From: Zygnema circumcarinatum SAG 698-1b
Taxonomy: Eukaryota; Plantae; Zygnematophyceae
Assembly (NCBI GenBank): GCA_037447605.1
Contig: CM074808.1
Span: 2,790,001 to 2,854,000 of the forward strand
DNA length: 64,000 bases
Direction: 5' to 3'
In this document: positions 46,218 through 64,000 of the stretch, in pieces
Numbering within the stretch: position 1 is the stretch's first letter
Layout of the letters: every line of letters starts with the position of its first letter
Made by a program: the position numbers and the translations under genes
Notes under the pieces: model-generated
Told to the model about the DNA's origin: nothing
Database searches by the model: none
The model's input: the letters and a program-made list of their open reading frames with translations, nothing else

Positions 46218-47147
46218 ATGGCTGCCCCCCCCGCACCGGAGAAGCAGCGTGCGCCTTGGGATACGCCCGAGCTTCTGGAGGTCGGGAAGGGCGTGACGTG
46301 GAGAGAAGCGAGCTTCCAATCCGACGACATAACGATTGTGTATTACTACACTGAGCCGGAGTCTGTTCTTCCAAAGCTTGTTTATATCCACGGCCGTGGC
46401 TCCGCCGGGGCAACCTCCCTGCTTCCTTTCGCAGGCTTTGCAGATGCCTTCCACGTGTTCGTTCCGGACGGCCGGGGTCGTGGCAAGACACAGCCATGTC
46501 CTCACGGCTCCTTCACTATGCCTCGCTTAATTCAAGATGCTATAGCCGCCATCAAACATGTCTCTCCTGGAGAGCCTGTATATCTAATTGGTCATTCCAT
46601 GGGAGCTTCGATAGCAGCACGCCTTGCAAAGGAGCATCCAGAGCTTGTGGCAGGTTTAGTCTTGGAAGATCCTCCATGGCGGCAGTTCCCTGGAGAAACG
46701 GCCCCTCTCACTGGGCTTCCTCCAGGAGGCGGACCGTTTCGTAAGGCTAGAGCCGTGCAAAATTTATCTGAAGAAGAGTTTTTGCAGGAGGAGGAGAAAC
46801 AGGGAGGTCACCGACTGCCTGAGCCATCGAAGACGCCTGTATGGGCGATGCGAGTGATGGATGTAGATCCAATAGAATATGCATTTACGGAAGAAGGGAT
46901 TGAAGTCAAGATAAGCGAGGCTGTGGAGGGAATAACTGTACCGGTTCTCATTATGAGGGCTTCTCATCTTTACCCGAAGGTAGCTGAAAAGGTGCTCGAG
47001 ACATATGCAGAAGGGGAAGAGATTTATTTTCCTGGAGAAGGACTACACACGATTCACAGTCCACCCAATCTCAGGAAGTGGTTGCAGGATGTCAAGGCAT
47101 TTTTTGCTAGGGTGAAGGCTAGTCGAAGCGAAGGAGGTCGGAAGTGA
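46218..47147 (+). CDS. Intronless alpha/beta-hydrolase (bacterial type), 309 aa
   Basis: Single ORF with a good ATG context. Motifs: YIHGRG, DGRGRG, LIGHSMGA nucleophile elbow, LVLEDPPW, GEGLHTIH. Confidence 0.9.
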   Translation: MAAPPAPEKQRAPWDTPELLEVGKGVTWREASFQSDDITIVYYYTEPESVLPKLVYIHGRGSAGATSLLPFAGFADAFHVFVPDGRGRGKTQPCPHGSFTMPRLIQDAIAAIKHVSPGEPVYLIGHSMGASIAARLAKEHPELVAGLVLEDPPWRQFPGETAPLTGLPPGGGPFRKARAVQNLSEEEFLQEEEKQGGHRLPEPSKTPVWAMRVMDVDPIEYAFTEEGIEVKISEAVEGITVPVLIMRASHLYPKVAEKVLETYAEGEEIYFPGEGLHTIHSPPNLRKWLQDVKAFFARVKASRSEGGRK

Positions 47148-48513
47148 GCATTAGGCAAACAAGTTTTCAGTTTTCGTACCTTTCACTTGTAAAAGAGGGA
47201 CGTGAGCTGCTTTGGCCGATGGCAAGCAACTGTCACGAGGCTGCTTCCAAAATCAATTTTGTTATATAACTCTCAAGTTATAGCAAACCAAGCCAGCTTC
47301 GAACACTTATTCGAGGTTTTTTATATATACAAGATAGGACGGCATATTTTTAAAAACAGCATGTGACGTTTCCAGTCACCTTCCGTTTTTTAAATAAGCC
47401 ACTGTCTTTTAACGAGGTCGTTGATTGGTTCATAGCATGGTCAACGTAGCCACACTCTTGAGTGAAACTTGAACATCAAAAGTTCGTTAACTTATTGATT
47501 TCAAATCACCTTGTTTGTTTTTATCGAATTGTCAACTGCTTCATTGCGGTAGATGCTGGTGGATTGGATTCCAATTTTTTGTCTGGTTTAAAGACAACAA
47601 CGTGACTTCTCGTTTTCCCAAGAAAATGTTTGCAGGATTGCAGCCAGTGAAAACGGTTTAGTTAAAAGTTTGATTACTTTATTTTCTAAGTGATTGAATC
47701 AGAAAGCGAATAGACAAGTTTTCATTTGCATGTACTTCAACGAAGTCTCATGGAACAGCGCAGTGCAAAAATGTGGTAACAGTGCAATGTGATGCTCGTT
47801 GACTTGGATTAGGGAAGGGCAGGGCAGGGAAAACAAGCCACCCGCCATTGCTCAAGTCGATAAACATGTTGAGATGCCGATACAGGGAATGGATTCACGG
47901 CACCAGATTCTAGGAAAGCACATGAATAGAAAGCGTCAAAGGCACAAACAACCTGCAATGGAGTTCATTTGTACCGGAAGGAGCGTTGGGATGAGCGGGT
48001 CAGATCGGCTGGACACCAGACCGTAGCCTTGGCCTGTTGCTGCAGCTTATGAACCCGAATCAATTATTTGGCATTAGCACATGTGTGCTGCTCAGCCAAA
48101 GTTCACTACCTGTGTATCTGCTTTTCAGTGGTGCAATTTTATACTACGAGCTGAGCCTGTTGACAACACAGGTCTTCAGTATGAGAAAATTCAAATGGAC
48201 GTGGGCGTCTAAACCTGCAACGTCCTGCCTGACTGTCTGCTACCAAAGCCGGATACTCTGCAAGTCTTGACTTTCCCTTAATTTAGATTGAAGTCTCAGT
48301 ACAATTGGACGGACCGTAGATGCTTTGCATCGCCAAGCCAGATACAAGTCGTTTTGTATAATCCCGGGGAGACGTTCAGATAACTCTACGACAGTCTAAG
48401 GTGTCTGCCACTACGGTTCAAAATGTAGCATGGGCTATTTTACGACGCAGGAGGTTTCAAATACAAGTTTTCACGGGGTACTAGTCAGCACAGGATAATT
48501 GTTGGTGGATGGA

Positions 48514-49629
48514 TCAGGAGATCAGAAAGCTTTTAAAGAATCCGCGAACCTCCTTTAACCATTCCATCAGCGTGGGGAGTTCGTGAATGACGTGCAACGC
48601 CTCTCCAGGATACTTCGTATCTTTGGCGTCTGTATAGCTCTCCAGAGCTTTCTTGGCTACGCCAGGATCAATATGCGAAGCGGACTGGAGCAGGACCGGT
48701 ACAGTAAGGTCCATGACTGCCTCGCTGATGACTGCGCCAGTCCCTTCCATGAAACTCTTTTCAACTGAATCAACATCCAGCATTCGCGAAGCCCATAGTC
48801 TTGTATGCACCCACGGGGGAAGCATCGCAGCTCCCTCGTTCTTTTCTCGCTCTGCAAACTCCTCCTTTGAAAACTCCTGAACTTTCCGCGACCACGCAAA
48901 GGGACCACCCTCCCGAGGACACGGCGGGATGAGTGGAGGCTCGCTCCTCTCAGCTTGACCAGGAAGAGTCCGCCATGGCGGGTCTTCAAGCACAAGGGCC
49001 TGAACCATTGACGGATGCTTTCCTGCAAGATGAGCAGCAACAGTCGCGCCCATGGAGTGGCCTATAACAAAGAGGGGCTGCCCAGCATACATGCGCTCCA
49101 TAAGGGCGAAAGAATCATTGACCAAATTCTCCATCGTGAAGCTGTCCGGAGGACACGGCTGCGTTAAACCGTGGCCCCGGTTATCAGCAACGAAGACGTG
49201 AAAAGAATCTGCAAGACCAGATAGTGCGAGCAAGCAGCAGCCTGCAGCATCTGTCAAGCCATGGATGAAGAGCAATCGAGGCAGCACAACTGCTGGATTG
49301 GAATGGTAATAACGGATGACGACGTCGTCTGATGGCAGAATATCAGGCGTCCAATTGATAGTAAGGCAAAGGTCCGTCAAGCTATTTGGAAATGGCACTT
49401 CAGCCGGAACAGTGCCTTCTTTTTCAGCAGTTGCAACTATACTTCCTTCGTCCTTCTGCGCAGCGCTGTGCTCTGCGTCTGGAACAATTGCTGGTGCAGA
49501 CGCTTGTGAATTGTCAGGCATGGTGGCTGTGAAAGCAATAAGCCGGTCGAGCATTGCCAGGGCAGTGTCTGTTGACACTACAGGAACTTGTTCAGGCAAG
49601 CCTCTGAGCAGCTGCCCCTCTGTGGCCAT
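48514..49629 (-). CDS. Intronless alpha/beta-hydrolase paralog with an ~80-aa N-terminal extension, 371 aa
   Basis: First in-frame ATG at 49629 (the ORF-track start at 49797 is a GTG). Motifs: FIHGLTD, DNRGHG, VIGHSMGA, LVLEDPPW, GEALHVIH. Confidence 0.88.
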   Translation of the reverse strand: MATEGQLLRGLPEQVPVVSTDTALAMLDRLIAFTATMPDNSQASAPAIVPDAEHSAAQKDEGSIVATAEKEGTVPAEVPFPNSLTDLCLTINWTPDILPSDDVVIRYYHSNPAVVLPRLLFIHGLTDAAGCCLLALSGLADSFHVFVADNRGHGLTQPCPPDSFTMENLVNDSFALMERMYAGQPLFVIGHSMGATVAAHLAGKHPSMVQALVLEDPPWRTLPGQAERSEPPLIPPCPREGGPFAWSRKVQEFSKEEFAEREKNEGAAMLPPWVHTRLWASRMLDVDSVEKSFMEGTGAVISEAVMDLTVPVLLQSASHIDPGVAKKALESYTDAKDTKYPGEALHVIHELPTLMEWLKEVRGFFKSFLIS

Positions 49630-54912: not shown

Positions 54913-57900
54913 ATGACTGTCATAACAAGTGCCAGCGGCCTGCTGGCCATGCTGGACGAAGAGCAGGAGGCTCTGAAAGTGCACGCTTTGAAGAATCTGA
55001 ATCGCTTGGTGGATCAATTCTGGGCGGAGATATCTGCAAACATTTCAAGCATGTAAGTAATTCCTTATTTTCTGGATATGGTGATTTTAACAACGTACGA
55101 TGAAGAAAATAATTTCGTAGGTCATTTCACCGCTAGTTCATCAAGTCCTGCATAAGATTCTGGTTCTCCATCGTTTGAGTCCCATGTTCATAAAATCGCT
55201 TCCTTCTCCACGTAATCTACTTTACATCACAAAAATCTGTTAAGTGTTCTAAACGGGAAGGAATTGGTAGCTGGACTTAATCGGCTCAGGTTACATCGGC
55301 TCATATGTCTTAGTGATGCCTTACATGCAGTGAAAGCCTGTACGAGGATGAGACTTTTGGACAAAGGGAGTTAGCGGCTCTGTTGGCTTCGAAGGTGAGC
55401 AGATTTCTTGCAGTCGTTGAAGTTTTTTCAAGAGTTCGTCCGTCTGCATTAATCTGCAACTCTGCATGACGGTGTTAGCCTCAATTGTGCAAGCAGTTAT
55501 TAGTACAGGCACCAACAAGGCCAATTTTCTCAATTTTCTCCAAATGATGAGTTTCTTCAGCGAAATCAATTTTTCGTTCGCTCATTATGTTCTGTGTGGA
55601 GCTTCTTCAAATCGTTGAAAATCCTCAATGTCTGAATTGTGACAACAGGTGTTCTATCATTTGGGGGAGTTGAATGATTCGTTGTCTTATGCGCTTGGAG
55701 CTGGCAGCCTTTTTGATGTTTCAGAGGAGTCAGAATATGTTCAGACTCTCGTCGGTGAGTTCTTTTCTTGGGTTTAACTAGCAGGGGGAAGTATACTTTA
55801 GCCTGTAGAGCAAGTTTTGCGGGGTAGCCGCTTAACTTTGTATGTTCATTCACGTGATCCTTGCCCGGTTACTCGAGCGAGTCTAAGTGTTGAACTCAGA
55901 TATTATCTAACTCAGGTGCTGATGTGTATGTGACCTTTCCTTGACTGTTAACTAGTGGATTAGCCTGTTTTAGACGAGGAATTTCCTGCCTAGTTTTTTG
56001 TGTGTTTGGACTTTTCTTCACAGCATGTATCTATCTAAAACCTTGCTCGGTGAACTGCAGCCAAGTGCATTGACGAGTATGTCGACGTCAGTATCAAGGC
56101 ATTGGAAACTTCAGAGGAGCACCCTCCACCAGACCCTCGATTGGTGGCAATTGTCGAAAAGATGCTTGACAAGTATGAGTTTAACTCCCAGATTTGAATG
56201 TGCGGATGAAAAAGACTTTTACTTTAAGGACTTGATATATTTCGAGTTGCTTCATTAGCCGATCCAGCTCATGGACTTTGCCGAACACAGCTATGTGAGG
56301 AGTAGATATTGCGATGTTGATGACACTGACAAGTGGTTTGGTTTCTTACCCTTCGTTTGCAGGTGTGTTGCCGATGGTCAATTTCAGCAGGCAATCGGTA
56401 TCGCCTTAGAGTGTCGGAGACTGGACAAGCTGGAGGAAGCAATTTTGAAGAGCTATGACATTTCTGGCCATCTTGCTTACACACTACGTGTCTCCCAGAC
56501 CCTCGTGAACCGGAGAGAGTTCCGTCAATCGGTAAGGGGGGGCTTATTTAGAAACACGGACTTAGAACTTGACCTTCGCTTTGGTGAATAATTCAACTCT
56601 AATTGCATTCATTACGTTTGCGCACTTTGCCTATGAGTGATCTTAAACTGAAATGAGAAGATTGTTTAATTACAAATTTGGTTGCTAATCACTGAGAACT
56701 GTAGATTAGTAGCTCGCTCCTGTTGGGCATGTTACTATTTTTTGCGCTTCCATTTCTCCCATGCTCCTTTATGTTTTTGCCGTTTCGTAGTGCAATCCAT
56801 ACTGACGTTTCAGCTTTCATTTGTTTGTAGGTCTTGCGCCTGCTTGTCAAACTATACGAGCAGTCGTCTTCACCGGACTATGTTAGCATTTGCCAGTGTC
56901 TGATGTTTCTCGAGGATCCGGGAAGTGTTGCTGCCATCCTTGACAAGCTGCTACGTGGTACCACGGTAAGCTGCAGCAAAGCAATCTGATTATGGGATGA
57001 GGCTTCTTGTTAAGAAGAGTACCATATTCCATTGAACTCTGCACTGTTCAATTGGAACCTTGTCATGTTTCTCCCTGTTTTATCGTTTACGATTCTACTA
57101 ATGTTTGAGATGTTTCTGATTCTTTTTGATGAAAGACTCTGAATGCTGCTGTATTTCAACAGCTTGGCAAAGCTCCTATTCCATGATTTGGTAGTTGTAC
57201 CTGGAAGCCTGTGGTTCCTATTTTCTATGAAGGAGGAAGACAGATATTGAGCACTCATCTAGTGGGCTGTGTGGCACAGGACGAGAATTTGCTGGCCTAT
57301 CAGGTTGCATTCGACCTTTTTGAAAACGAATTTCAGCAGTTTTTGCTCAATGTCCGTGACCTTCTTCCAGATCCGCGCGTTCCTGCCACTGCAGTGCCTC
57401 CTCTATCCCAAGGAGACCCTGATCCAGTGTCAATAGTTGACGAGCCCTCAAGTCAGGCTCCAACTACTGAAGCTGCCGAGGATGGGCATTCTGCGATGGA
57501 AACTGAAGAAATAACAGCAAATGCTGGCAAAGAGGAGCCTGCCGTACCACCAACAGATGAATCAATGCGCCCTCCTCAGACAGGGGCTGAGTCAGAGCAT
57601 GCAGTAGGTGCAGCAGTTGGATCGAATGATGAGGTCTCGGCACCTGCTCCTGTGGAGACTTCGGGATTGTCCAGTGAGGTCCTTCAGTATGCGGACAGGC
57701 TTGGGAAATTGAAGGGAATTCTTTCGGGGGAAACACCTATCAGCTTGACGTTGCAGTTTCTGTATAGTCATAACAAGTAAGATTTTTCGCTCCTTGAGGA
57801 TCGGCCGTTTTGACTGCCTATGAAGATTTTCCTTCGTTGCGGGAAAACTTGACAACTGTCAATCAGGATAAATGCGTCTTTTTCTTAATGTCGAGTTTTT

Positions 57901-60900
57901 TTGCGGTGCATGTCTTCCAGGTCAGATTTGTTAATATTGAAGAACATCAAGCAGTCTGTGGAGATGCGAAACAGTGTTTGCCATAGCGCAACCATATTTT
58001 CCAATGCACTGATGCACGGTGGCACAACTGTGGATACTTTCCTCCGCGAAAACTTGGTAAGAAACTCAGTCATCTGAGATGCCAAGTCTGTACGATTCCT
58101 CCTCTGTAGAATATGCTGTTGACTGTCCTATAAGACATTTTCTATGCAGGAAGTTCTTTACCATACTTGTCTGTTCCGTGCATGTCTTAACCGAAGTTTT
58201 CATCTCTACTTCAGGATTGGTTGAGCCGTGCCACGAACTGGGCAAAGTTCAGTGCTACTGCTGGTCTTGGAGTCATTCACAGAGGCCATTTGCAGCAGGG
58301 CCGCTCCTTGATGGCTCCTTATTTACCACAAAATGGAACTAGTGGTAGCCCATTCTCGGAGGGAGGGGCTTTGTATGCACTCGGCCTCATTCATGCCAAC
58401 CATGGAGAGGGCATTAAGCAGTTTTTATTGGAAAGCCTAAGGAACACAAGCAATGAGGTACGACCGGACAAATGCTGGTTGTCACATCCTCAATTGTTGT
58501 TCCTCTCTGTCCTGTACCTGGTTTTGTTGTCAAGGTGTTAAAATGCAGGAGAATTTCCGTCGCATGGAATCGATTTGCTCTCCCGATGACGAGGTTACAT
58601 TTATAGATTGACTCATGGGCACAAAGCTGATTTACTGGCAGGTTATCCAACACGGTGCCTGTCTTGGATTAGGGCTTGCGGCTCTTGGAACAGCAGATGA
58701 AGAAGTGTATGAAGATGTGAAGAGTGTATTGTATACAGACAGTGCTGTTGCGGGAGAGGCGGCCGGCATCAGTATGGGTCTCCTCATGGTCGGCACTGCA
58801 AGTGAGAAGGCTGGAGAGATGTTGGCTTACGCCCATGATACACAGCATGAGAAAATCATCAGGTAAGGCCTGTCTACCTTCTTTCATGGTTGGTAGAATC
58901 TACAGGCTAAGATAGTAGTCGGTGTTCAATATGTTCTTTGGTGTTCAATATTAAGAATGTCGCTCTTGACGCATATAAGACAGGTTCTCTATATCTGGAA
59001 GTTGGTAACTTGCATGAATGAGGTTGGTGTTATAATTGCCGACTTCTCTACCTGTATTCCAAGCACTGACGTGTTGAGTAGTCGGTGCTGCATTGCTAAT
59101 GAGCCCTTTGTTAACTAGTCCGTAATCTGCCTCGTTGATGGGTGACAGAGGCTTGGCTCTCGGAATAGCTTTAGTTGTGTATGGCCGGGAAGAAGAGGCA
59201 GATACCTTGATTGAGCAGATGACCAGAGACCAGGATCCCATTCTGCGATATGGAGGGATGTACGCCCTCGGAATGGCTTATAGAGGAACAGCAAATAATG
59301 GCGCCATCAGACAGCTCCTGCATTTTGCTGTATCGGATGTAAGCGATGATGTACGAAGAGCAGCAGTACTGTCTCTTGGCTTTGTCCTTTGCTCCGAGCC
59401 TGAGCAGGTAGGTTACTCTGTCTGAGTTTTGGTAACACTTGTGTGGGCAGGGGTACGTCAAACACAATATCAGACCTTGTTTCCTTTAGCAAATGGTGGA
59501 GTCTCCTCACTATCATTTTTCTCACCTACGCTTATCTGTGTTGTGCTTTTGACCAGCCTCTTCCTGTAAATTGAGGTCATGGATGTGATGAGCCTCCAAA
59601 AAGTTGCATGTGAGCGCGCTACATGTGTATCTAGCACGCATTCGTGATCAGTTTACAACCTTTCTTTTCGGTATTGAGTATGATTTGTGTCGTTGACCTT
59701 GCAGATGCCTCGAATTGTTTCACTTCTTTCCGAGTCCTACAATGCGCATGTGCGTTATGGAGCAGCCTTGGCTGTCGGAATTTCTTGTGCTGGCACGGGA
59801 TTGAGTGAAGCTATCGGTTTGATTGAACCTTTAACTACAGACGCAGTTGACTTTGTGCGTCAAGGAGCGCTGCTGGCCATGGCCATGGTGCTCATGCAGA
59901 CTACAGAGGAGCGCGAACCGCGGGTTGGCACATTCAGGTGATGTCGAACTTTTAGCAAACAATGCATCCACTTGTTGGTCAATTTATTTACTTTTTTTCA
60001 CTTTATTTAGTCAATTTCACTGTAAAGAATGGAATGAGTATTTTAGGGCGTCTCGTCACTTCTTTCAGAACGAGTGTGATGCATGTCTTCGGACCACCTT
60101 GCTCAATTGAGTGGCTCGTTCTTCGTTTGCGTCTAATCCGTTTTCCATTGGTGAATGTACACATTCATATCAATGCACAGCATGCAATAGGTATGCTGCA
60201 TGCTGCTGAACGTGTGCTGCTGAGCTTCTTGCTTCTGCAGGCGACAGCTGGACAAGATCATTGCGGACAAGCATGAAGACACGATGAGCAAGATGGGCGC
60301 CATTTTGGCATGCGGCATTCTGGATGCAGGGGGGCGCAATGTCACTATAAGCTTGAGGTCTAAGACGGGTCATGACCGGATCATGGCCATGGTGGGAATG
60401 GCAGTCTTCACGCAGTTCTGGTATTGGTATCCGCTCATCTACTTTATAAGCCTTGCGTTCGCCCCCACCGCATTCATAGGCTTACAGCAAGACCTCAAGA
60501 TGCCAAAGTTTGAATTTATCTCCGACTGTAGACCCTCTCTCTTCCGGTATCCTCCACCTGCCTCGTCTCAATCGTCTGCCCCAGCTGTCAAGGTGCCCAC
60601 GGCAGTCCTTTCCACAGCTATCCGTGCGAAAAGCAAGGCGAAGAAGGAAGCAGAGGCGAAATTGGAGAAAGCGAAGGAGAAGAAGGAGAAGGAAATGGAA
60701 GATGTCAAGGTGGCGGGTGAACGAGGATCTGCTCCAACAGATGGGAGTGAAGAGAGCCAAAGAGGCAGTGGTGATGCAATGGAGGTGAGAGTTTCACAGA
60801 GTTGGTTCGGCTTCTTGGGTGTAGATACACTGCCAGTTGATCGCCTGAGTTGACTTGAAATCATTACAGGGTCTTTCAGTTCATTACACTTTATTCCATC

Positions 60901-61285
60901 AAGCACAGAGCGCTCCACTTCCGATGCTCACTGTCTGCTCTTTCTGAATCCACAGGTGGATGCTGCTTCCGGAAAGAAGGCAGGCAAGAAGGAGAACCCG
61001 GAACCGAGTTTTGAAGTGCTTGAAAACCCGGCCCGTGTGCTTCCTGCCCAGGACAAGTACATCAAGTTCCCCCCCGACTGCCGGTATGTGCCTCTGAAAG
61101 CAGTGCACTCAGGCTTCGTGATGCTCAAAAATCGGCAAAGAGAAGAGCCGGAGGAGCTGGTTGCCAACGATGCCCCGGTCGGTGCTGCCGACAGCGGCCA
61201 CAGGGGCGCGGCGGCCGGGCAGGGGGCCGCCCAAGATGAGGACGAACCCCCTCCCCCGGAGGCGTTCGAGTATGGCTCCTCTTGA
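54913..61285 (+). CDS. RPN2: 26S proteasome non-ATPase regulatory subunit 1 (RPN2/PSMD1), 1062 aa, 14 exons
   Basis: Exons: 54913-55052, 55331-55394, 55649-55754, 56061-56172, 56363-56531, 56831-56965, 57280-57776, 57921-58056, 58215-58457, 58642-58862, 59149-59407, 59705-59937, 60241-60784, 60956-61285 (3189 nt). Motifs: [59 protein letters not shown]. Confidence 0.97.
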
Positions 61286-62183
61286 GCAGGGAGGGAGGGA
61301 GGCAGCGCAGCTGCAGGGACCGAGGAGGGTAGGGGTAGGGGGGCTGTGAATGTATTGAATTTTGGAAATTTAGGCTGAATATGGCTCGCTTGTTCATGGC
61401 ATCGCCACGGGGTCTGCTCCCTGTGTAAGCGTGCATTTGCCGTGGTCCATGTTCACGAGAGTCATGCCTTTTGAGATTATGATGTGCTTCTCTCGTCTGT
61501 CACAATGGCTCACGTTTGGCCGATGACATGTTGTAGTGGTGGTGCTCGAGCAGTGCCGGTGGCCCTAAATGCTTGTTGAAGATGGTGGGCAGTTAATTCA
61601 ACGCCAGGATTTCTTACTCTTCAGGGAGAGAATTCTTGATTTAAAAACAGCTAAGAAGCAGGAGCAGTGCCGTATGCTGATCGTCTTCCTAAAGAGAAAC
61701 TGGGGCTCCTAGAAACCCATCCATCGGCCACGCTCTGAAGAAAAGTTGCCTTTGCAACAAGAAGATGGCATCTGTGCCTGTGAAAGCGAGTGTCCTAGAA
61801 GCTCACAGTGAACATTTGAAGCCTCGAGTGATCGTATCCTGGCCGTCCGTTCGCATCCGACGGTGTAAAATCCTTCGTGCAGAAGTTTCCTGCCGTCCAA
61901 AATCTGCCCGTCCCTGCGCCTTTCCCGTTGGTTTGAAAACGGAGGGCGGTCGCAACGGCCCGGCGAGAAAGAGCCGCCGCCGAGCAAGGCTGAAGGCTGC
62001 AAGGCCATGGCGGCTGCTGGCAGGAGGCGGGCATGGCGGCAGGCTTGAGAGCTGCCTCTCAGCTTTCTGGCACCGCCAGTGCCATCGCCAATTGATACTG
62101 TCGGATACGCATTGCAGAAGGCACTTGGAGAGGCATCAGACGGCTGATATTCACAGGTTTTATGCAGATTGGAGGGCCAGAAC

Positions 62184-63349
62184 ATGGCGACTAGGGGCTA
62201 TGAGCTCGTTTCTTTACAAAACGATAGTAGTTTGGCGGGATTTTTGGAAAAAGCTTCAGCTGTGGTGAAGTCCGGTCCAAGCAGAACATCTACAAATGTC
62301 ACATTTGCGAACTCTACCGATACTACAGTGCAGACCTTCTGGTTCAACTATCAGGGAGAAAAGGTGTAAACTGCAAACCTCCTGTCTAATTGACTCAAAA
62401 GTAGCCCCTGGGTTAGGTTATTTTGGGAATTCATTTCATTGGCCTTCGCAGCGTATGCTGCATTTTCAAAGCAGGTTCGAGTTATTGCTTATGCTTTCCT
62501 TGACGTATTCTGCTTCGTAATAATGTTCAGTAGAGGTCCCTGCCTCTTTATGCTGTCACTGAGATGTATAGGGATATCTAGTGCGTTTGCAGGTGCCGTA
62601 TCAGACGATCAAACCTGGCAAACAGTATGTCCAACCTACATATGTACTTCATCCTTGGTGTTTTGAAGATGCAATCACACGTCAGCCTTTGGTTGTGAGC
62701 AAGAAACTGGTAAGTATCCGTCACGACGGACCAACGATTTTATGATTTTTATGCCAACGATTTTCAAAAACAGTATACATGCACTTCGAAAAATCCAGTC
62801 TCGCGCAATAAGGCTTCACTCAGCAGTACACGCAAAAATCACAATGTCAGCGTCGCTCAGTCAGCGTTAGTACTCTCATGTCGAAATCGCTCTTGTACTA
62901 AAAAAGGTCATTGCTGAGTAAAAAGCTCGCCATAAGTACTGCATGCATCCTGCCACATTTAACGTGCATGTATTAGCTGCAAGTAAATTCACACGTGTCT
63001 ACCGTCCAGGCACAAGCTGTAATTAAAGCAAAAACTATAGTTGATGTTAAATTGTCTGATGGATCTGGATTGCTGATGCTACTGGATTTTGCTGGAGAAC
63101 TTCTCACCTTTTGGTAGCTGTTGACGCGTGATGTAGGTAGTGTTTCCAGACGACGCAGCACAGAGTGTGATGACTATTAGTCGCCCCGTGGAGATTGAGT
63201 GGACCCAGGAAAACCATGCGCGGTTCCCTCCGGATTTTCAATCAGCCGTCAGGGAGCTGCTGCTTTGTTATCATCGATCCAGCTCAATGTTTCAAGTTTG
63301 CAAGTCAATAAATTCCCTGAATCTCGATGTACGTGCATCCTTCTTTTAG
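62184..63349 (+). CDS. VHL beta-domain-containing protein; C-terminal exon structure unresolved
   Basis: Exons 62184-62363, 62593-62709, 63137-63295 or later (read-through stop at 63349). The spliced sequence KSGPSRTSTNVTFANSTDTTVQTFWFNYQGEKVPYQTIKPGKQYVQPTYVLHPWCFEDAITRQPLVVSKKLVVFP aligns without gaps to pVHL residues 64-138 as I recall that sequence. Confidence 0.8.
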
Positions 63350-63770
63350 GACTGGATCTCATTTCCATATTTAGGTTCACGTGATGAGCTTGGGCATAAT
63401 GCATGTGGGAAAGAAATCACGACTTCCTTTACAATGACAAGATCACGTTACCTGAACATTTTCGGACATTGAGATTATCATGACGTCTATCCAGGTTTGT
63501 TGTTATCAGTGTTTACAGAAGGGAGGACATAGATGAGTTGACCTTATGCTTGCAACACTGTGAATACCTCAGCAAAAGGTTACAAACCATAGACTTGAGC
63601 TCATTGAGTGGGATAATGCCATTAGTCCTCTAGGATCTTCTACTGATTATTGCGAGTCAGTAGAAATTGAATATGGAAGAATACCTTGAGGTGGTTGTGA
63701 ATGGTTTCTAAGATATTGAATGTTTAGGACAGTAAAAAGCACCAAAAGAGTTTCCGGCGCACTCATCTTC

Positions 63771-64000
63771 CTAGCAGTAGGCCTCCGCTGCCAATGCCAT
63801 TACCAGCATCTGTAATTCACACAATAACTTTCTCACGCCATGTGAACTCCTTTGCTGTGTGATGCAGGCCAACGATTCGCAAGATGACAGTGCGCTAAAA
63901 AATGGATACAAGGTGCGAACGAGTGGCCTGTTTGGTAAAGTACCATCAGATGTGCTTTTCATTATTATCAAACGATCTGCACCGAAGGTTCTCGACGTTG
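63771..64000 (-). CDS. Possible terminal exon of a gene entering from the right edge; product unknown
   Basis: The frame is open from the window edge to the TAG at 63771 (...LCELQMLVMALAAEAYC*). No recognisable domain. Confidence 0.3.
   Translation of the reverse strand, partial: TSRTFGADRLIIMKSTSDGTLPNRPLVRTLYPFFSALSSCESLACITQQRSSHGVRKLLCELQMLVMALAAEAYC

What the first reader, a model, noticed from the sequence alone, without database searches (positions are those of the whole stretch)
62184..63349. VHL beta-domain protein with an intact hydroxyproline pocket but a non-VHL C-terminus, in a plant-lineage genome
Seen: the spliced product aligns without gaps to human pVHL 64-138 as recalled (26 of 75 identical by my hand count). 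The hydroxyproline-binding residues W88, Y98, H115 and W117 are conserved and S111 is Thr. The Elongin-C-binding BC-box is replaced by WTQENHARFPPDFQSAVRELLLCYHR. Known: pVHL reads prolyl-hydroxylated HIF-alpha; HIF is animal-specific; flowering plants sense oxygen through the PCO/ERF-VII N-degron route. Inference: an uncharacterised, HIF-independent hydroxyproline-reader module, possibly oxygen-dependent, with unknown substrate and effector. VHL-like domains outside animals are known to exist, so the novelty lies in the function and architecture.
Basis: partly seen in the sequence, partly recalled or inferred. Interest (0 to 1): 0.7.

Follow-up and report, generated by a model that had tools for sequence, protein, structure and literature searches.

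The report
Algal VHL-like protein, unusual tail
A green alga close to land plants expresses a small protein whose core is a true relative of the hydroxyproline-reading part of the human tumour suppressor VHL, but whose tail is a conserved two-helix module unlike VHL's ligase-docking part, so what it reads and what it signals to remain untested.

Summary
The gene is real and expressed. Spliced contigs from four runs of three studies confirm three GT..AG introns. Exons 1-3 encode a VHL beta domain: Pfam PF01847 matches consecutive parts of the profile on exons 1 and 2, and a profile of the family finds human VHL at E 5e-9. The pocket positions W88, Y98, H115 and W117 are identical, and S111 is Thr, in all five family members found.

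The stop at 63349 lies in intron 3. A fourth exon starts at 63868 and runs off the window, probably two to eleven codons short of the stop.

The tail is not a VHL alpha domain. It has no VHL_C, BC-box, F-box or SOCS-box match. It consists of two conserved helices joined by a variable linker: W-x4-H-x-RFP-x2-F-x3-V-x2-LLL, then (L/V)P-x-D/E-LL-x2-I…AP-x-VLD. Full-length orthologues occur in Closterium, in two transcriptome assemblies (one from run ERR2041114) and on a metagenome contig, two of them with matching intron positions.

Most likely it is a cytosolic reader of (hydroxy)proline peptides with a lineage-specific docking tail. Ligand, oxygen dependence and partner are all untested. I rate it a new variant of a known kind. 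The scan noted three other VHL-like genes in this genome.

The parts
61980..62183 (+). Transcribed leader (5' UTR). It contains a 13-codon uORF at 62007-62048.
   Evidence: In run X1 the spliced contig starts at 61980 (record 2). The uORF was read directly from the sequence. In runs X2, X3 and X5 the contigs run on upstream into the neighbouring gene, so the true start is not fixed.
62184..62363 (+). Exon 1, 60 codons: a short N-terminal segment and the first third of the VHL beta domain. It includes N43 (VHL N78) and the pocket residue W53 (VHL W88) at 62340-62342.
   Evidence: Pfam VHL E 5.4e-4, profile positions 1-32; joint 62363|62593.
62364..62592 (+). Intron 1 (229 nt, GT..AG, phase 0).
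   Evidence: Skipped in the spliced contigs of all four runs. The intron sits at the same codon in the orthologue on L002.
62593..62709 (+). Exon 2, 39 codons: the middle of the VHL beta domain with pocket residues Y63 (62599-62601), T76 (62638-62640), H80 (62650-62652) and W82 (62656-62658).
   Evidence: Pfam VHL E 1.3e-6, profile positions 35-71; gapless alignment to human VHL 97-131.
62710..63136 (+). Intron 2 (427 nt, GT..AG, phase 0).
   Evidence: The position is the same in the L002 orthologue.
63137..63328 (+). Exon 3, 64 codons: the last beta strand (SVMTISRP, 63164-63187), then tail helix A with the motif W-x4-H-x-RFP-x2-F-x3-V-x2-LLL (63200-63277).
   Evidence: joints 62709|63137 and 63328|63868; W, H, R, P, F and LL invariant in 7 sequences; helix predicted in two orthologue models.
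63329..63867 (+). Intron 3 (539 nt, GT..AG, phase 0).
   Evidence: Skipped in all four runs at depth 55-759. Only low-depth unspliced contigs cover it.
63868..64000 (+). Exon 4, cut off by the window end: at least 44 codons of variable linker, then tail helix B, VPSDVLFIIIKRSAPKVLDV (63940-63999). Going by the orthologues, about 2-11 codons are missing.
   Evidence: contigs run 133 nt to the window end and 200-750 nt beyond it; aligned with the C-termini of P0004, P0003, P0006 and P0009.

Best explanation
The gene encodes a soluble protein of about 210 residues with no signal peptide. It has three parts.

(1) A short N-terminal segment.

(2) A VHL-type beta sandwich that keeps the five residues which, in human pVHL, cradle trans-4-hydroxyproline: W53, Y63, T76 (Ser in VHL), H80 and W82.

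(3) In place of VHL's Elongin-C-binding alpha domain, a family-specific tail of two conserved helices joined by a variable, probably disordered linker.

I infer that the beta domain binds a short extended peptide containing hydroxyproline, or possibly plain proline, in the way pVHL binds the HIF degron. By analogy with VHL, SOCS-box and F-box receptors that partner would be an adaptor of a ubiquitin ligase, but its identity is unknown.

Shown here: the gene structure, expression, the fold, residue conservation, and the lack of a VHL alpha domain. Inferred: ligand, oxygen dependence and partner.
For: Expression and gene model: the three GT..AG joints appear in spliced contigs of four runs from three studies.

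VHL beta domain:
- Pfam PF01847 hits exons 1 and 2 in profile order.
- Orthologues score 8e-16 and 3e-11.
- The family profile finds human VHL at E 5e-9.
- AF2 models of two orthologues superpose on human VHL 60-155 with Z 12.0-12.4 and rmsd 1.7-2.0 A over 81-91 residues.

Pocket: W88, Y98, H115 and W117 are identical and S111 is Thr in all five family members, while many other positions vary.

Tail under selection: W, H, R, P, F and LL of helix A are invariant in 7 sequences, and the P and A of helix B are invariant in 6. Both helices are predicted at pLDDT about 81 in the second model.

Orthology: introns 1 and 2 sit at the same codons in the metagenome orthologue on L002.

Proline context of the domain elsewhere: VHL beta domains are fused to DPP-IV/S9 prolyl peptidases in planctomycetes. 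A diatom cluster annotated only with a 2OG-Fe(II) oxygenase family also matches the model by shape.

Cytosolic prolyl hydroxylation is plausible in this lineage. Genes like those of the Skp1 hydroxylation pathway are reported in green algae (PMC3515798). A scan note reports a PhyA-Gnt1 fusion in this same genome (s1-337022; I did not check it).
Against: No binding data exist for any non-animal VHL domain.

The pocket geometry could not be inspected, because the tools do not return model coordinates. The window's own protein could not be folded, because the joined product has no reference.

Ser to Thr at position 111 adds a methyl group inside the pocket. The five residues are also among the most conserved positions of the family, so part of their conservation could be structural.

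The tail matches no known adaptor-binding box: not Pfam F-box, SOCS-box or VHL_C, and no F-box or SOCS-box chain in PDB profile searches.

A ubiquitin-ligase role is analogy only. Plants are said to lack Cullin-2 (PMC13223302).
Confidence: 0.5

Rival explanations
1. It is a generic proline-rich-peptide binder that does not depend on hydroxylation. On this view the VHL beta sandwich is an old peptide-docking module, the protein binds unmodified proline motifs, and it has nothing to do with oxygen.
For: The domain is widespread outside any HIF system. It is fused to enzymes that act on unmodified proline peptides (DPP-IV/S9 peptidases), and to SH3_3, SASA and PUB domains. Scan note s1-397000 reports a fusion to a Pro-Pro-endopeptidase-like protease in this genome (not checked by me).
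Against: The two residues that hydrogen-bond the Hyp hydroxyl in pVHL are kept in all five members: H115 is identical and S111 becomes Thr, which keeps the hydroxyl. That is not expected if the hydroxyl were irrelevant.
Confidence: 0.25
2. It is an SCF-type substrate receptor. Tail helix B, (L/V)P-x-D/E-LL-x2-I…AP, would be a truncated C-terminal F-box first helix that binds Skp1. The protein would then be a natural counterpart of the engineered F-box-VHL-beta chimera.
For: The LP-x-E/D-LL-x2-I pattern of helix B resembles the start of F-boxes (pattern recalled from memory; alignment). An engineered SLY1 F-box fused to the VHL beta domain degrades hydroxylated HIF-ODD fusions in plant cells (PMC13223302).
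Against: There is no Pfam F-box or F-box-like hit at E up to 10 on exon 4 or on the full-length orthologues. PDB searches with the helix-B profile and with single sequences return only designed helical repeats, and no F-box protein. The protein ends about 10 residues after the helix, so F-box helices 2 and 3 are absent.
Confidence: 0.15
3. It is a degenerate BC-box receptor. One of the tail helices would still bind an Elongin-C homologue: helix A as F-x3-V-x3-L, or helix B as [LI]-x3-[ACS]-x3-V. On this view the VHL alpha domain was reduced rather than replaced.
For: Helix A lies where VHL helix H1 (the BC-box) lies, directly after the last beta strand. Both helices fit a relaxed spacing of hydrophobic-x3-small-x3-hydrophobic (my reading).
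Against: The canonical [STP]-L-x3-C-x3-[VILA] pattern is not met in the window protein. There is no VHL_C hit. The profile and structural alignments to VHL stop before the alpha domain. Helix B carries a Pro two residues after the 'C' position. A follow-up agent found no BC-box in a paralogue (s1-339072).
Confidence: 0.08
4. It is an artefact or a decaying gene: a chance ORF, a pseudogene or a mis-assembled locus.
For: None beyond the shortness of the exons.
Against: Spliced RNA appears in three studies at depths far above the intron signal. The reading frame is intact across four exons. Orthologues exist with the same architecture and the same intron positions. Functional residues are invariant.
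Confidence: 0.02

Closest known systems
Human/animal pVHL (Pfam VHL PF01847 + VHL_C PF17211), substrate receptor of the Cul2-Elongin B/C ligase
   Same: It has the same beta-sandwich fold (Z about 12, rmsd 1.7-2.0 A, 21-24% identity in orthologue models). The alignment to VHL 64-135 is gapless. The Hyp-pocket residues W88, Y98, H115 and W117 are identical and S111 is Thr. N78 is also kept.
   Different: It has no alpha domain, BC-box or Cul2 box. The tail is a different two-helix module with a variable linker. The gene sits in a streptophyte alga.
Uncharacterised VHL-domain proteins of green algae (ESM Atlas Chlorophyta cluster, 294 aa, PF01847 in 96% of members; Closterium 'unnamed protein product' P0004)
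   Same: P0004 (Closterium sp. Yama58-4) has the same architecture from end to end and is about 50% identical over the exons. The Chlorophyta cluster is the best structural match, and that alignment spans the tail as well.
   Different: None of them has a described function. The chlorophyte-like fragments end in AAYPLSAW rather than AP-x-VLDID.
Engineered SLY1 F-box-VHL beta chimera working with human PHD3 in Arabidopsis (PMC13223302)
   Same: It is a VHL beta domain joined to a non-Elongin docking part in a plant-lineage cell. It shows that such a design can drive Hyp-dependent degradation there.
   Different: That protein is synthetic, carries a bona fide F-box placed N-terminally, and uses human PHD3 and the HIF ODD. 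The natural protein here has no recognisable F-box, and its hydroxylase and substrate are unknown.
VHL beta-domain fusions outside animals (diatom PUB+VHL; planctomycete DPP-IV/S9+VHL; SH3_3+VHL; SASA+VHL; SELENOM+pVHL in Aureococcus, PMC7539508)
   Same: They reuse the same beta sandwich as a module. In several cases it sits next to proline-directed enzymes.
   Different: Those carry enzymatic or other known partner domains. This protein carries only the short conserved helical tail.

Membership tests
VHL family (pVHL-like) | Beta-sandwich domain matching Pfam PF01847 | tested here: met
   Exon 1 hits at E 5.4e-4 (20.4 bits, just under the 21-bit cut-off on its own). Exon 2 hits at E 1.3e-6 (28.8 bits, above the cut-off). 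The two hits cover collinear profile parts. Orthologues score 58 and 44 bits. The joined product was not scanned, because that step was left out.
VHL family (pVHL-like) | Hydroxyproline-pocket residues W88, Y98, S111, H115, W117 | tested here: met
   Four residues are identical and S111 is Thr, both in the window protein and in all four relatives. This is a sequence-level test only. The pocket geometry was not inspected.
VHL family (pVHL-like) | Alpha domain with BC-box (S/T/P-L-x3-C-x3-V/I/L/A) and Cul2 box (Pfam VHL_C) | tested here: not met
   No VHL_C hit at E up to 10 on the exons or the orthologues. The profile alignment to human VHL ends near residue 135. Structural alignments end at VHL 155 in the better model. 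No BC-box pattern is found in exons 3 and 4.
VHL family (pVHL-like) | Binds Elongin C/B and Cul2; Hyp-dependent binding of a degron | not testable with these tools
   This needs a complex prediction or a biochemical test.
F-box proteins (SCF receptors) | Three-helix F-box of about 40-50 residues recognised by Pfam F-box or F-box-like models | tested here: not met
   No F-box family at E up to 10. No F-box chain appears in PDB searches with the helix-B profile or with single sequences. Only a motif-level likeness (LP-x-E/D-LL-x2-I) remains.
SOCS-box proteins | BC-box helix followed by a Cul5 box (LPxP) | tested here: not met
   No Pfam SOCS_box hit. No SOCS-box chain appears in the PDB profile searches.
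Green-algal VHL-like family with the two-helix tail (defined here) | VHL beta domain, then W-x4-H-x-RFP-x2-F-x3-V-x2-LLL, a variable linker, and a C-terminal (L/V)P-x-D/E-LL-x2-I…A(P) helix | tested here: met
   Alignments A3, A4, A5 and A6. Shared intron positions with the L002 orthologue.

The most novel reading that the evidence does not exclude
Streptophyte and other green algae may run a pre-animal, HIF-independent 'hydroxylase plus reader' oxygen-sensing pair. A cytosolic PhyA/PHD-type prolyl hydroxylase would mark a protein: Skp1 itself or another target. This small family of VHL-like readers (four genes in this genome by the scan's notes) would bind the hydroxyproline. Through the new two-helix tail the readers would hand the marked protein to a ligase or another effector. 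That would make the PHD-VHL logic older than animals and would give a natural counterpart to the engineered F-box-VHL system in plants.
Probability: 0.15. Interest if true: 0.85.

Novelty: new variant of a known kind. Interest (0 to 1): 0.55.

Why it matters
The HIF-PHD-pVHL triad is treated as an animal invention. Outside animals, PHD-type enzymes are known (Skp1 hydroxylation in protists), but no hydroxyproline reader has been described. For plant cells, evidence that prolyl hydroxylation controls protein stability is said to be lacking (PMC13223302).

This is an expressed, conserved VHL-like protein with the full set of Hyp-contacting residues, in an alga close to land plants, and it has lost the Elongin/Cul2 docking part in favour of a new conserved tail. 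It gives a concrete, small, easily expressed protein on which two questions can be tested. Did a hydroxyproline reader exist before HIF? What does such a reader plug into in a lineage said to lack Cullin-2?

If it binds only plain proline motifs, it is an ordinary peptide-binding adaptor.

Tried and rejected
It lies in intron 3.

(2) F-box reading of helix B: no Pfam or PDB support. I keep it only as a low-probability rival.

(3) BC-box or SOCS-box reading: the pattern is not met and there are no hits.

(4) Helix B as the equivalent of VHL helix H4. The better second model did not reproduce it.

(5) Helix A profile against the PDB. The best hit is the start of the LUX/GARP Myb domain (W-x4-H-x-RF, E 0.06). 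I judged it a chance motif match, because the remaining Myb helices are absent.

(6) The representative-library search with exon 3 also returned bacterial TPR-like repeat proteins (P0001, P0005) through an 'NPARFAPD' repeat. These are spurious.

(7) ESM Atlas feature searches with the tail (P0004 137-210) and with P0011: scores were at most 0.87 and no family emerged.

(8) Whether the tail module is general and sits on other N-terminal domains. P0011 lies downstream of a 506-codon ORF with an ankyrin-like look on L003, but there is no Pfam hit and no proof that it is one gene. Left open.

(9) The window's own full-length protein was not found in either protein collection. Orthologues served as proxies for folding.

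(10) Literature: no paper on VHL-like proteins of streptophyte or green algae was found in the held library. There are only passing mentions of algal and bacterial VHL-domain fusions.

Full report
Gene model. On the + strand an ATG at 62184 opens a 60-codon exon that ends at a GT donor (62364). A 39-codon exon follows at 62593-62709, and a third exon starts at 63137. I laid the contigs of four public runs (three studies; organism coded) on 61700-64000. Each run carries spliced contigs with the joints 62363|62593, 62709|63137 and 63328|63868. All three joints are GT..AG and phase 0, at depths of 55-1173, against 5-38 for the few contigs that cover the introns. The runs are not on record as RNA, but contigs that lack canonical introns can only come from cDNA.

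A fourth exon starts at 63868 and runs to the window's last base, and the contigs continue 200-750 nt beyond it. In run X1 the leader starts near 61980.

The VHL domain. Pfam VHL (PF01847) matches exon 1 residues 28-59 on profile positions 1-32 (E 5.4e-4) and exon 2 residues 2-38 on positions 35-71 (E 1.3e-6). These are two consecutive pieces of one profile on two consecutive exons. Exon 2 aligns without gaps to human VHL 97-131.

A profile of the family (alignment A3) finds every human and mouse VHL chain in the PDB at E 5e-9 to 3e-8, and nothing else below E 0.3. Using the VHL letters printed there, the window protein aligns gaplessly at an offset of 35. W53, Y63, H80 and W82 equal W88, Y98, H115 and W117, and T76 stands for S111. 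N78 is also kept.

Relatives. The exhaustive representative search with exon 3 and three word-index searches found only a handful of relatives:
- P0004, 210 aa, 'unnamed protein product' of Closterium sp. Yama58-4.
- P0008, a Closterium Naga37s-1 model that looks like a merger with a chlorophyll a/b-binding gene.
- P0006 (243 aa, from transcriptome run ERR2041114) and P0009 (230 aa, Logan).
- P0003, the last exons of a gene on metagenome contig L002.
- Short GC-rich fragments: P0002, P0007, P0010 and P0011.

The window's own protein is in neither collection. P0004 and P0006 score 8e-16 and 3e-11 against Pfam VHL and hit no other family. On L002 the first two introns sit at the same codons as in the window gene, which supports orthology. 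In all five members that cover the beta domain, the five pocket positions are invariant (W, Y, T, H, W), while many other positions vary.

Structure. The joined window protein has no reference, so I folded two orthologues with the family alignment.
- P0004: mean pLDDT 63.7, beta domain 78-94.
- P0009: mean pLDDT 69.4, beta domain 84-92, tail helices about 81.

Foldseek finds only VHL chains at the top (E about 5e-8). VIA-align gives Z 12.0-12.4 and rmsd 1.7-2.0 A over 81-91 residues against VHL 60-155, with 21-24% identity. This did not recur in the better second model, so I do not rely on it. Neither model aligns with the VHL alpha domain. I could not look at coordinates, so pocket openness is untested.

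The tail. After the last beta strand (SVMTISRP) comes helix A, W-x4-H-x-RFP-x2-F-x3-V-x2-LLL. W, H, R, P, F and LL are invariant in seven sequences. A linker of very variable length follows, and then helix B, (L/V)P-x-D/E-LL-x2-I…A-P-x-VLD, close to the C-terminus. The window ends at …APKVLDV. The orthologues stop 2 to 11 residues later, so almost the whole protein is in the window.

The chlorophyte-like fragments carry the same two helices but end in AAYPLSAW. Their starts resemble the last beta strand, so they may be last exons of VHL-like genes too. One of them (P0011) lies downstream of a long ORF with an ankyrin-like look but no Pfam hit, so this question is open.

The tail matches nothing known:
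- No VHL_C, F-box, F-box-like or SOCS_box at E up to 10.
- PDB profile searches with helix A or helix B give only a chance LUX/GARP motif and designed helical repeats.
- Atlas feature searches give nothing.

The likeness of helix B to the first F-box helix, and of either helix to a relaxed BC-box spacing, is at motif level only.

Wider context. A shape search of the ESM Atlas shows the VHL beta sandwich in several settings:
- A Chlorophyta cluster, which is the best match and spans the tail.
- Chordate VHL.
- Diatom PUB+VHL proteins, and a diatom cluster annotated only as a 2OG-Fe(II) oxygenase family that also matches by shape.
- Planctomycete DPP-IV/S9 peptidases, and bacterial SH3_3 and SASA proteins.

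The domain is thus an old module, often found beside proline-directed enzymes. Its presence in algae is catalogued but uncharacterised. In the held literature I found only passing mentions: a SELENOM-pVHL fusion in Aureococcus (PMC7539508) and some bacterial cases.

A 2026 paper shows that an engineered F-box-VHL-beta chimera plus human PHD3 gives oxygen-dependent degradation in Arabidopsis. It states that plants lack Cullin-2 and that evidence for PHD-controlled protein stability in plants is lacking (PMC13223302). Genes like those of the Skp1 hydroxylation pathway are reported in green algae (PMC3515798).

Notes of this scan, which I did not check, report a PhyA-Gnt1 fusion in this same genome and three further VHL-like genes. 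For one of these a follow-up agent also found no BC-box. The scan has therefore met this family before, on other DNA of this genome.

Reading. My best-supported reading is a cytosolic reader of (hydroxy)proline peptides with a lineage-specific docking tail (confidence about 0.5). The fold, the residues, expression and conservation are shown. Ligand, oxygen dependence and partner are inferred. The rivals are a hydroxylation-independent proline-motif binder (0.25), an SCF receptor through a truncated F-box-like helix (0.15), a degenerate BC-box receptor (0.08) and an artefact (0.02).

It is not a member of the pVHL ligase-receptor family in the strict sense, because the alpha domain test fails. 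It may nevertheless work like one at its reading end.

Noticed in passing
window 56200-61285 (+): The upstream neighbour looks like the 26S proteasome subunit RPN2/PSMD1: many short exons, with a C-terminal exon ending at the stop at 61285. This is my reading of the ORF translations, not a search result. In runs X2, X3 and X5 one contig runs from this gene into the VHL-like gene. In X1 the two are separate.
   Followed up: partly
window 62007-62048 (+): A 13-codon upstream ORF (ATG…TGA) lies in the transcribed leader of the VHL-like gene.
   Followed up: no
window 63448-63682: A low-depth joint with CT..AC ends (a GT..AG intron on the minus strand) lies inside intron 3, in run X3 only (depth 6.3). 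It may be a spliced antisense RNA.
   Followed up: no
P0008 (Closterium sp. Naga37s-1, CAI5507800.1): This deposited model joins a chlorophyll a/b-binding domain (PF00504) to the VHL domain and then loses the tail. It is probably a merged or mis-spliced gene model, not a real fusion.
   Followed up: no
L002:6715-7775 (+), metagenome contig GROS21-1 scaffold_2500: A complete orthologue with introns 1 and 2 at the same codons as in the window gene. The prokaryote-style gene call (P0003) captured only its last part.
   Followed up: partly
L003:2-2284 (+): The two-helix tail module (P0011, ending AAYPLSAW) lies downstream of a 506-codon ORF on the same strand. That ORF has an ankyrin-like look but no Pfam hit. 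If they form one gene, the tail module is not restricted to VHL-like proteins.
   Followed up: partly
window 46218-49629: The scan index lists another first-stage note on this window: a tail-to-tail pair of intronless alpha/beta-hydrolase paralogues. I did not look at it.
   Followed up: no
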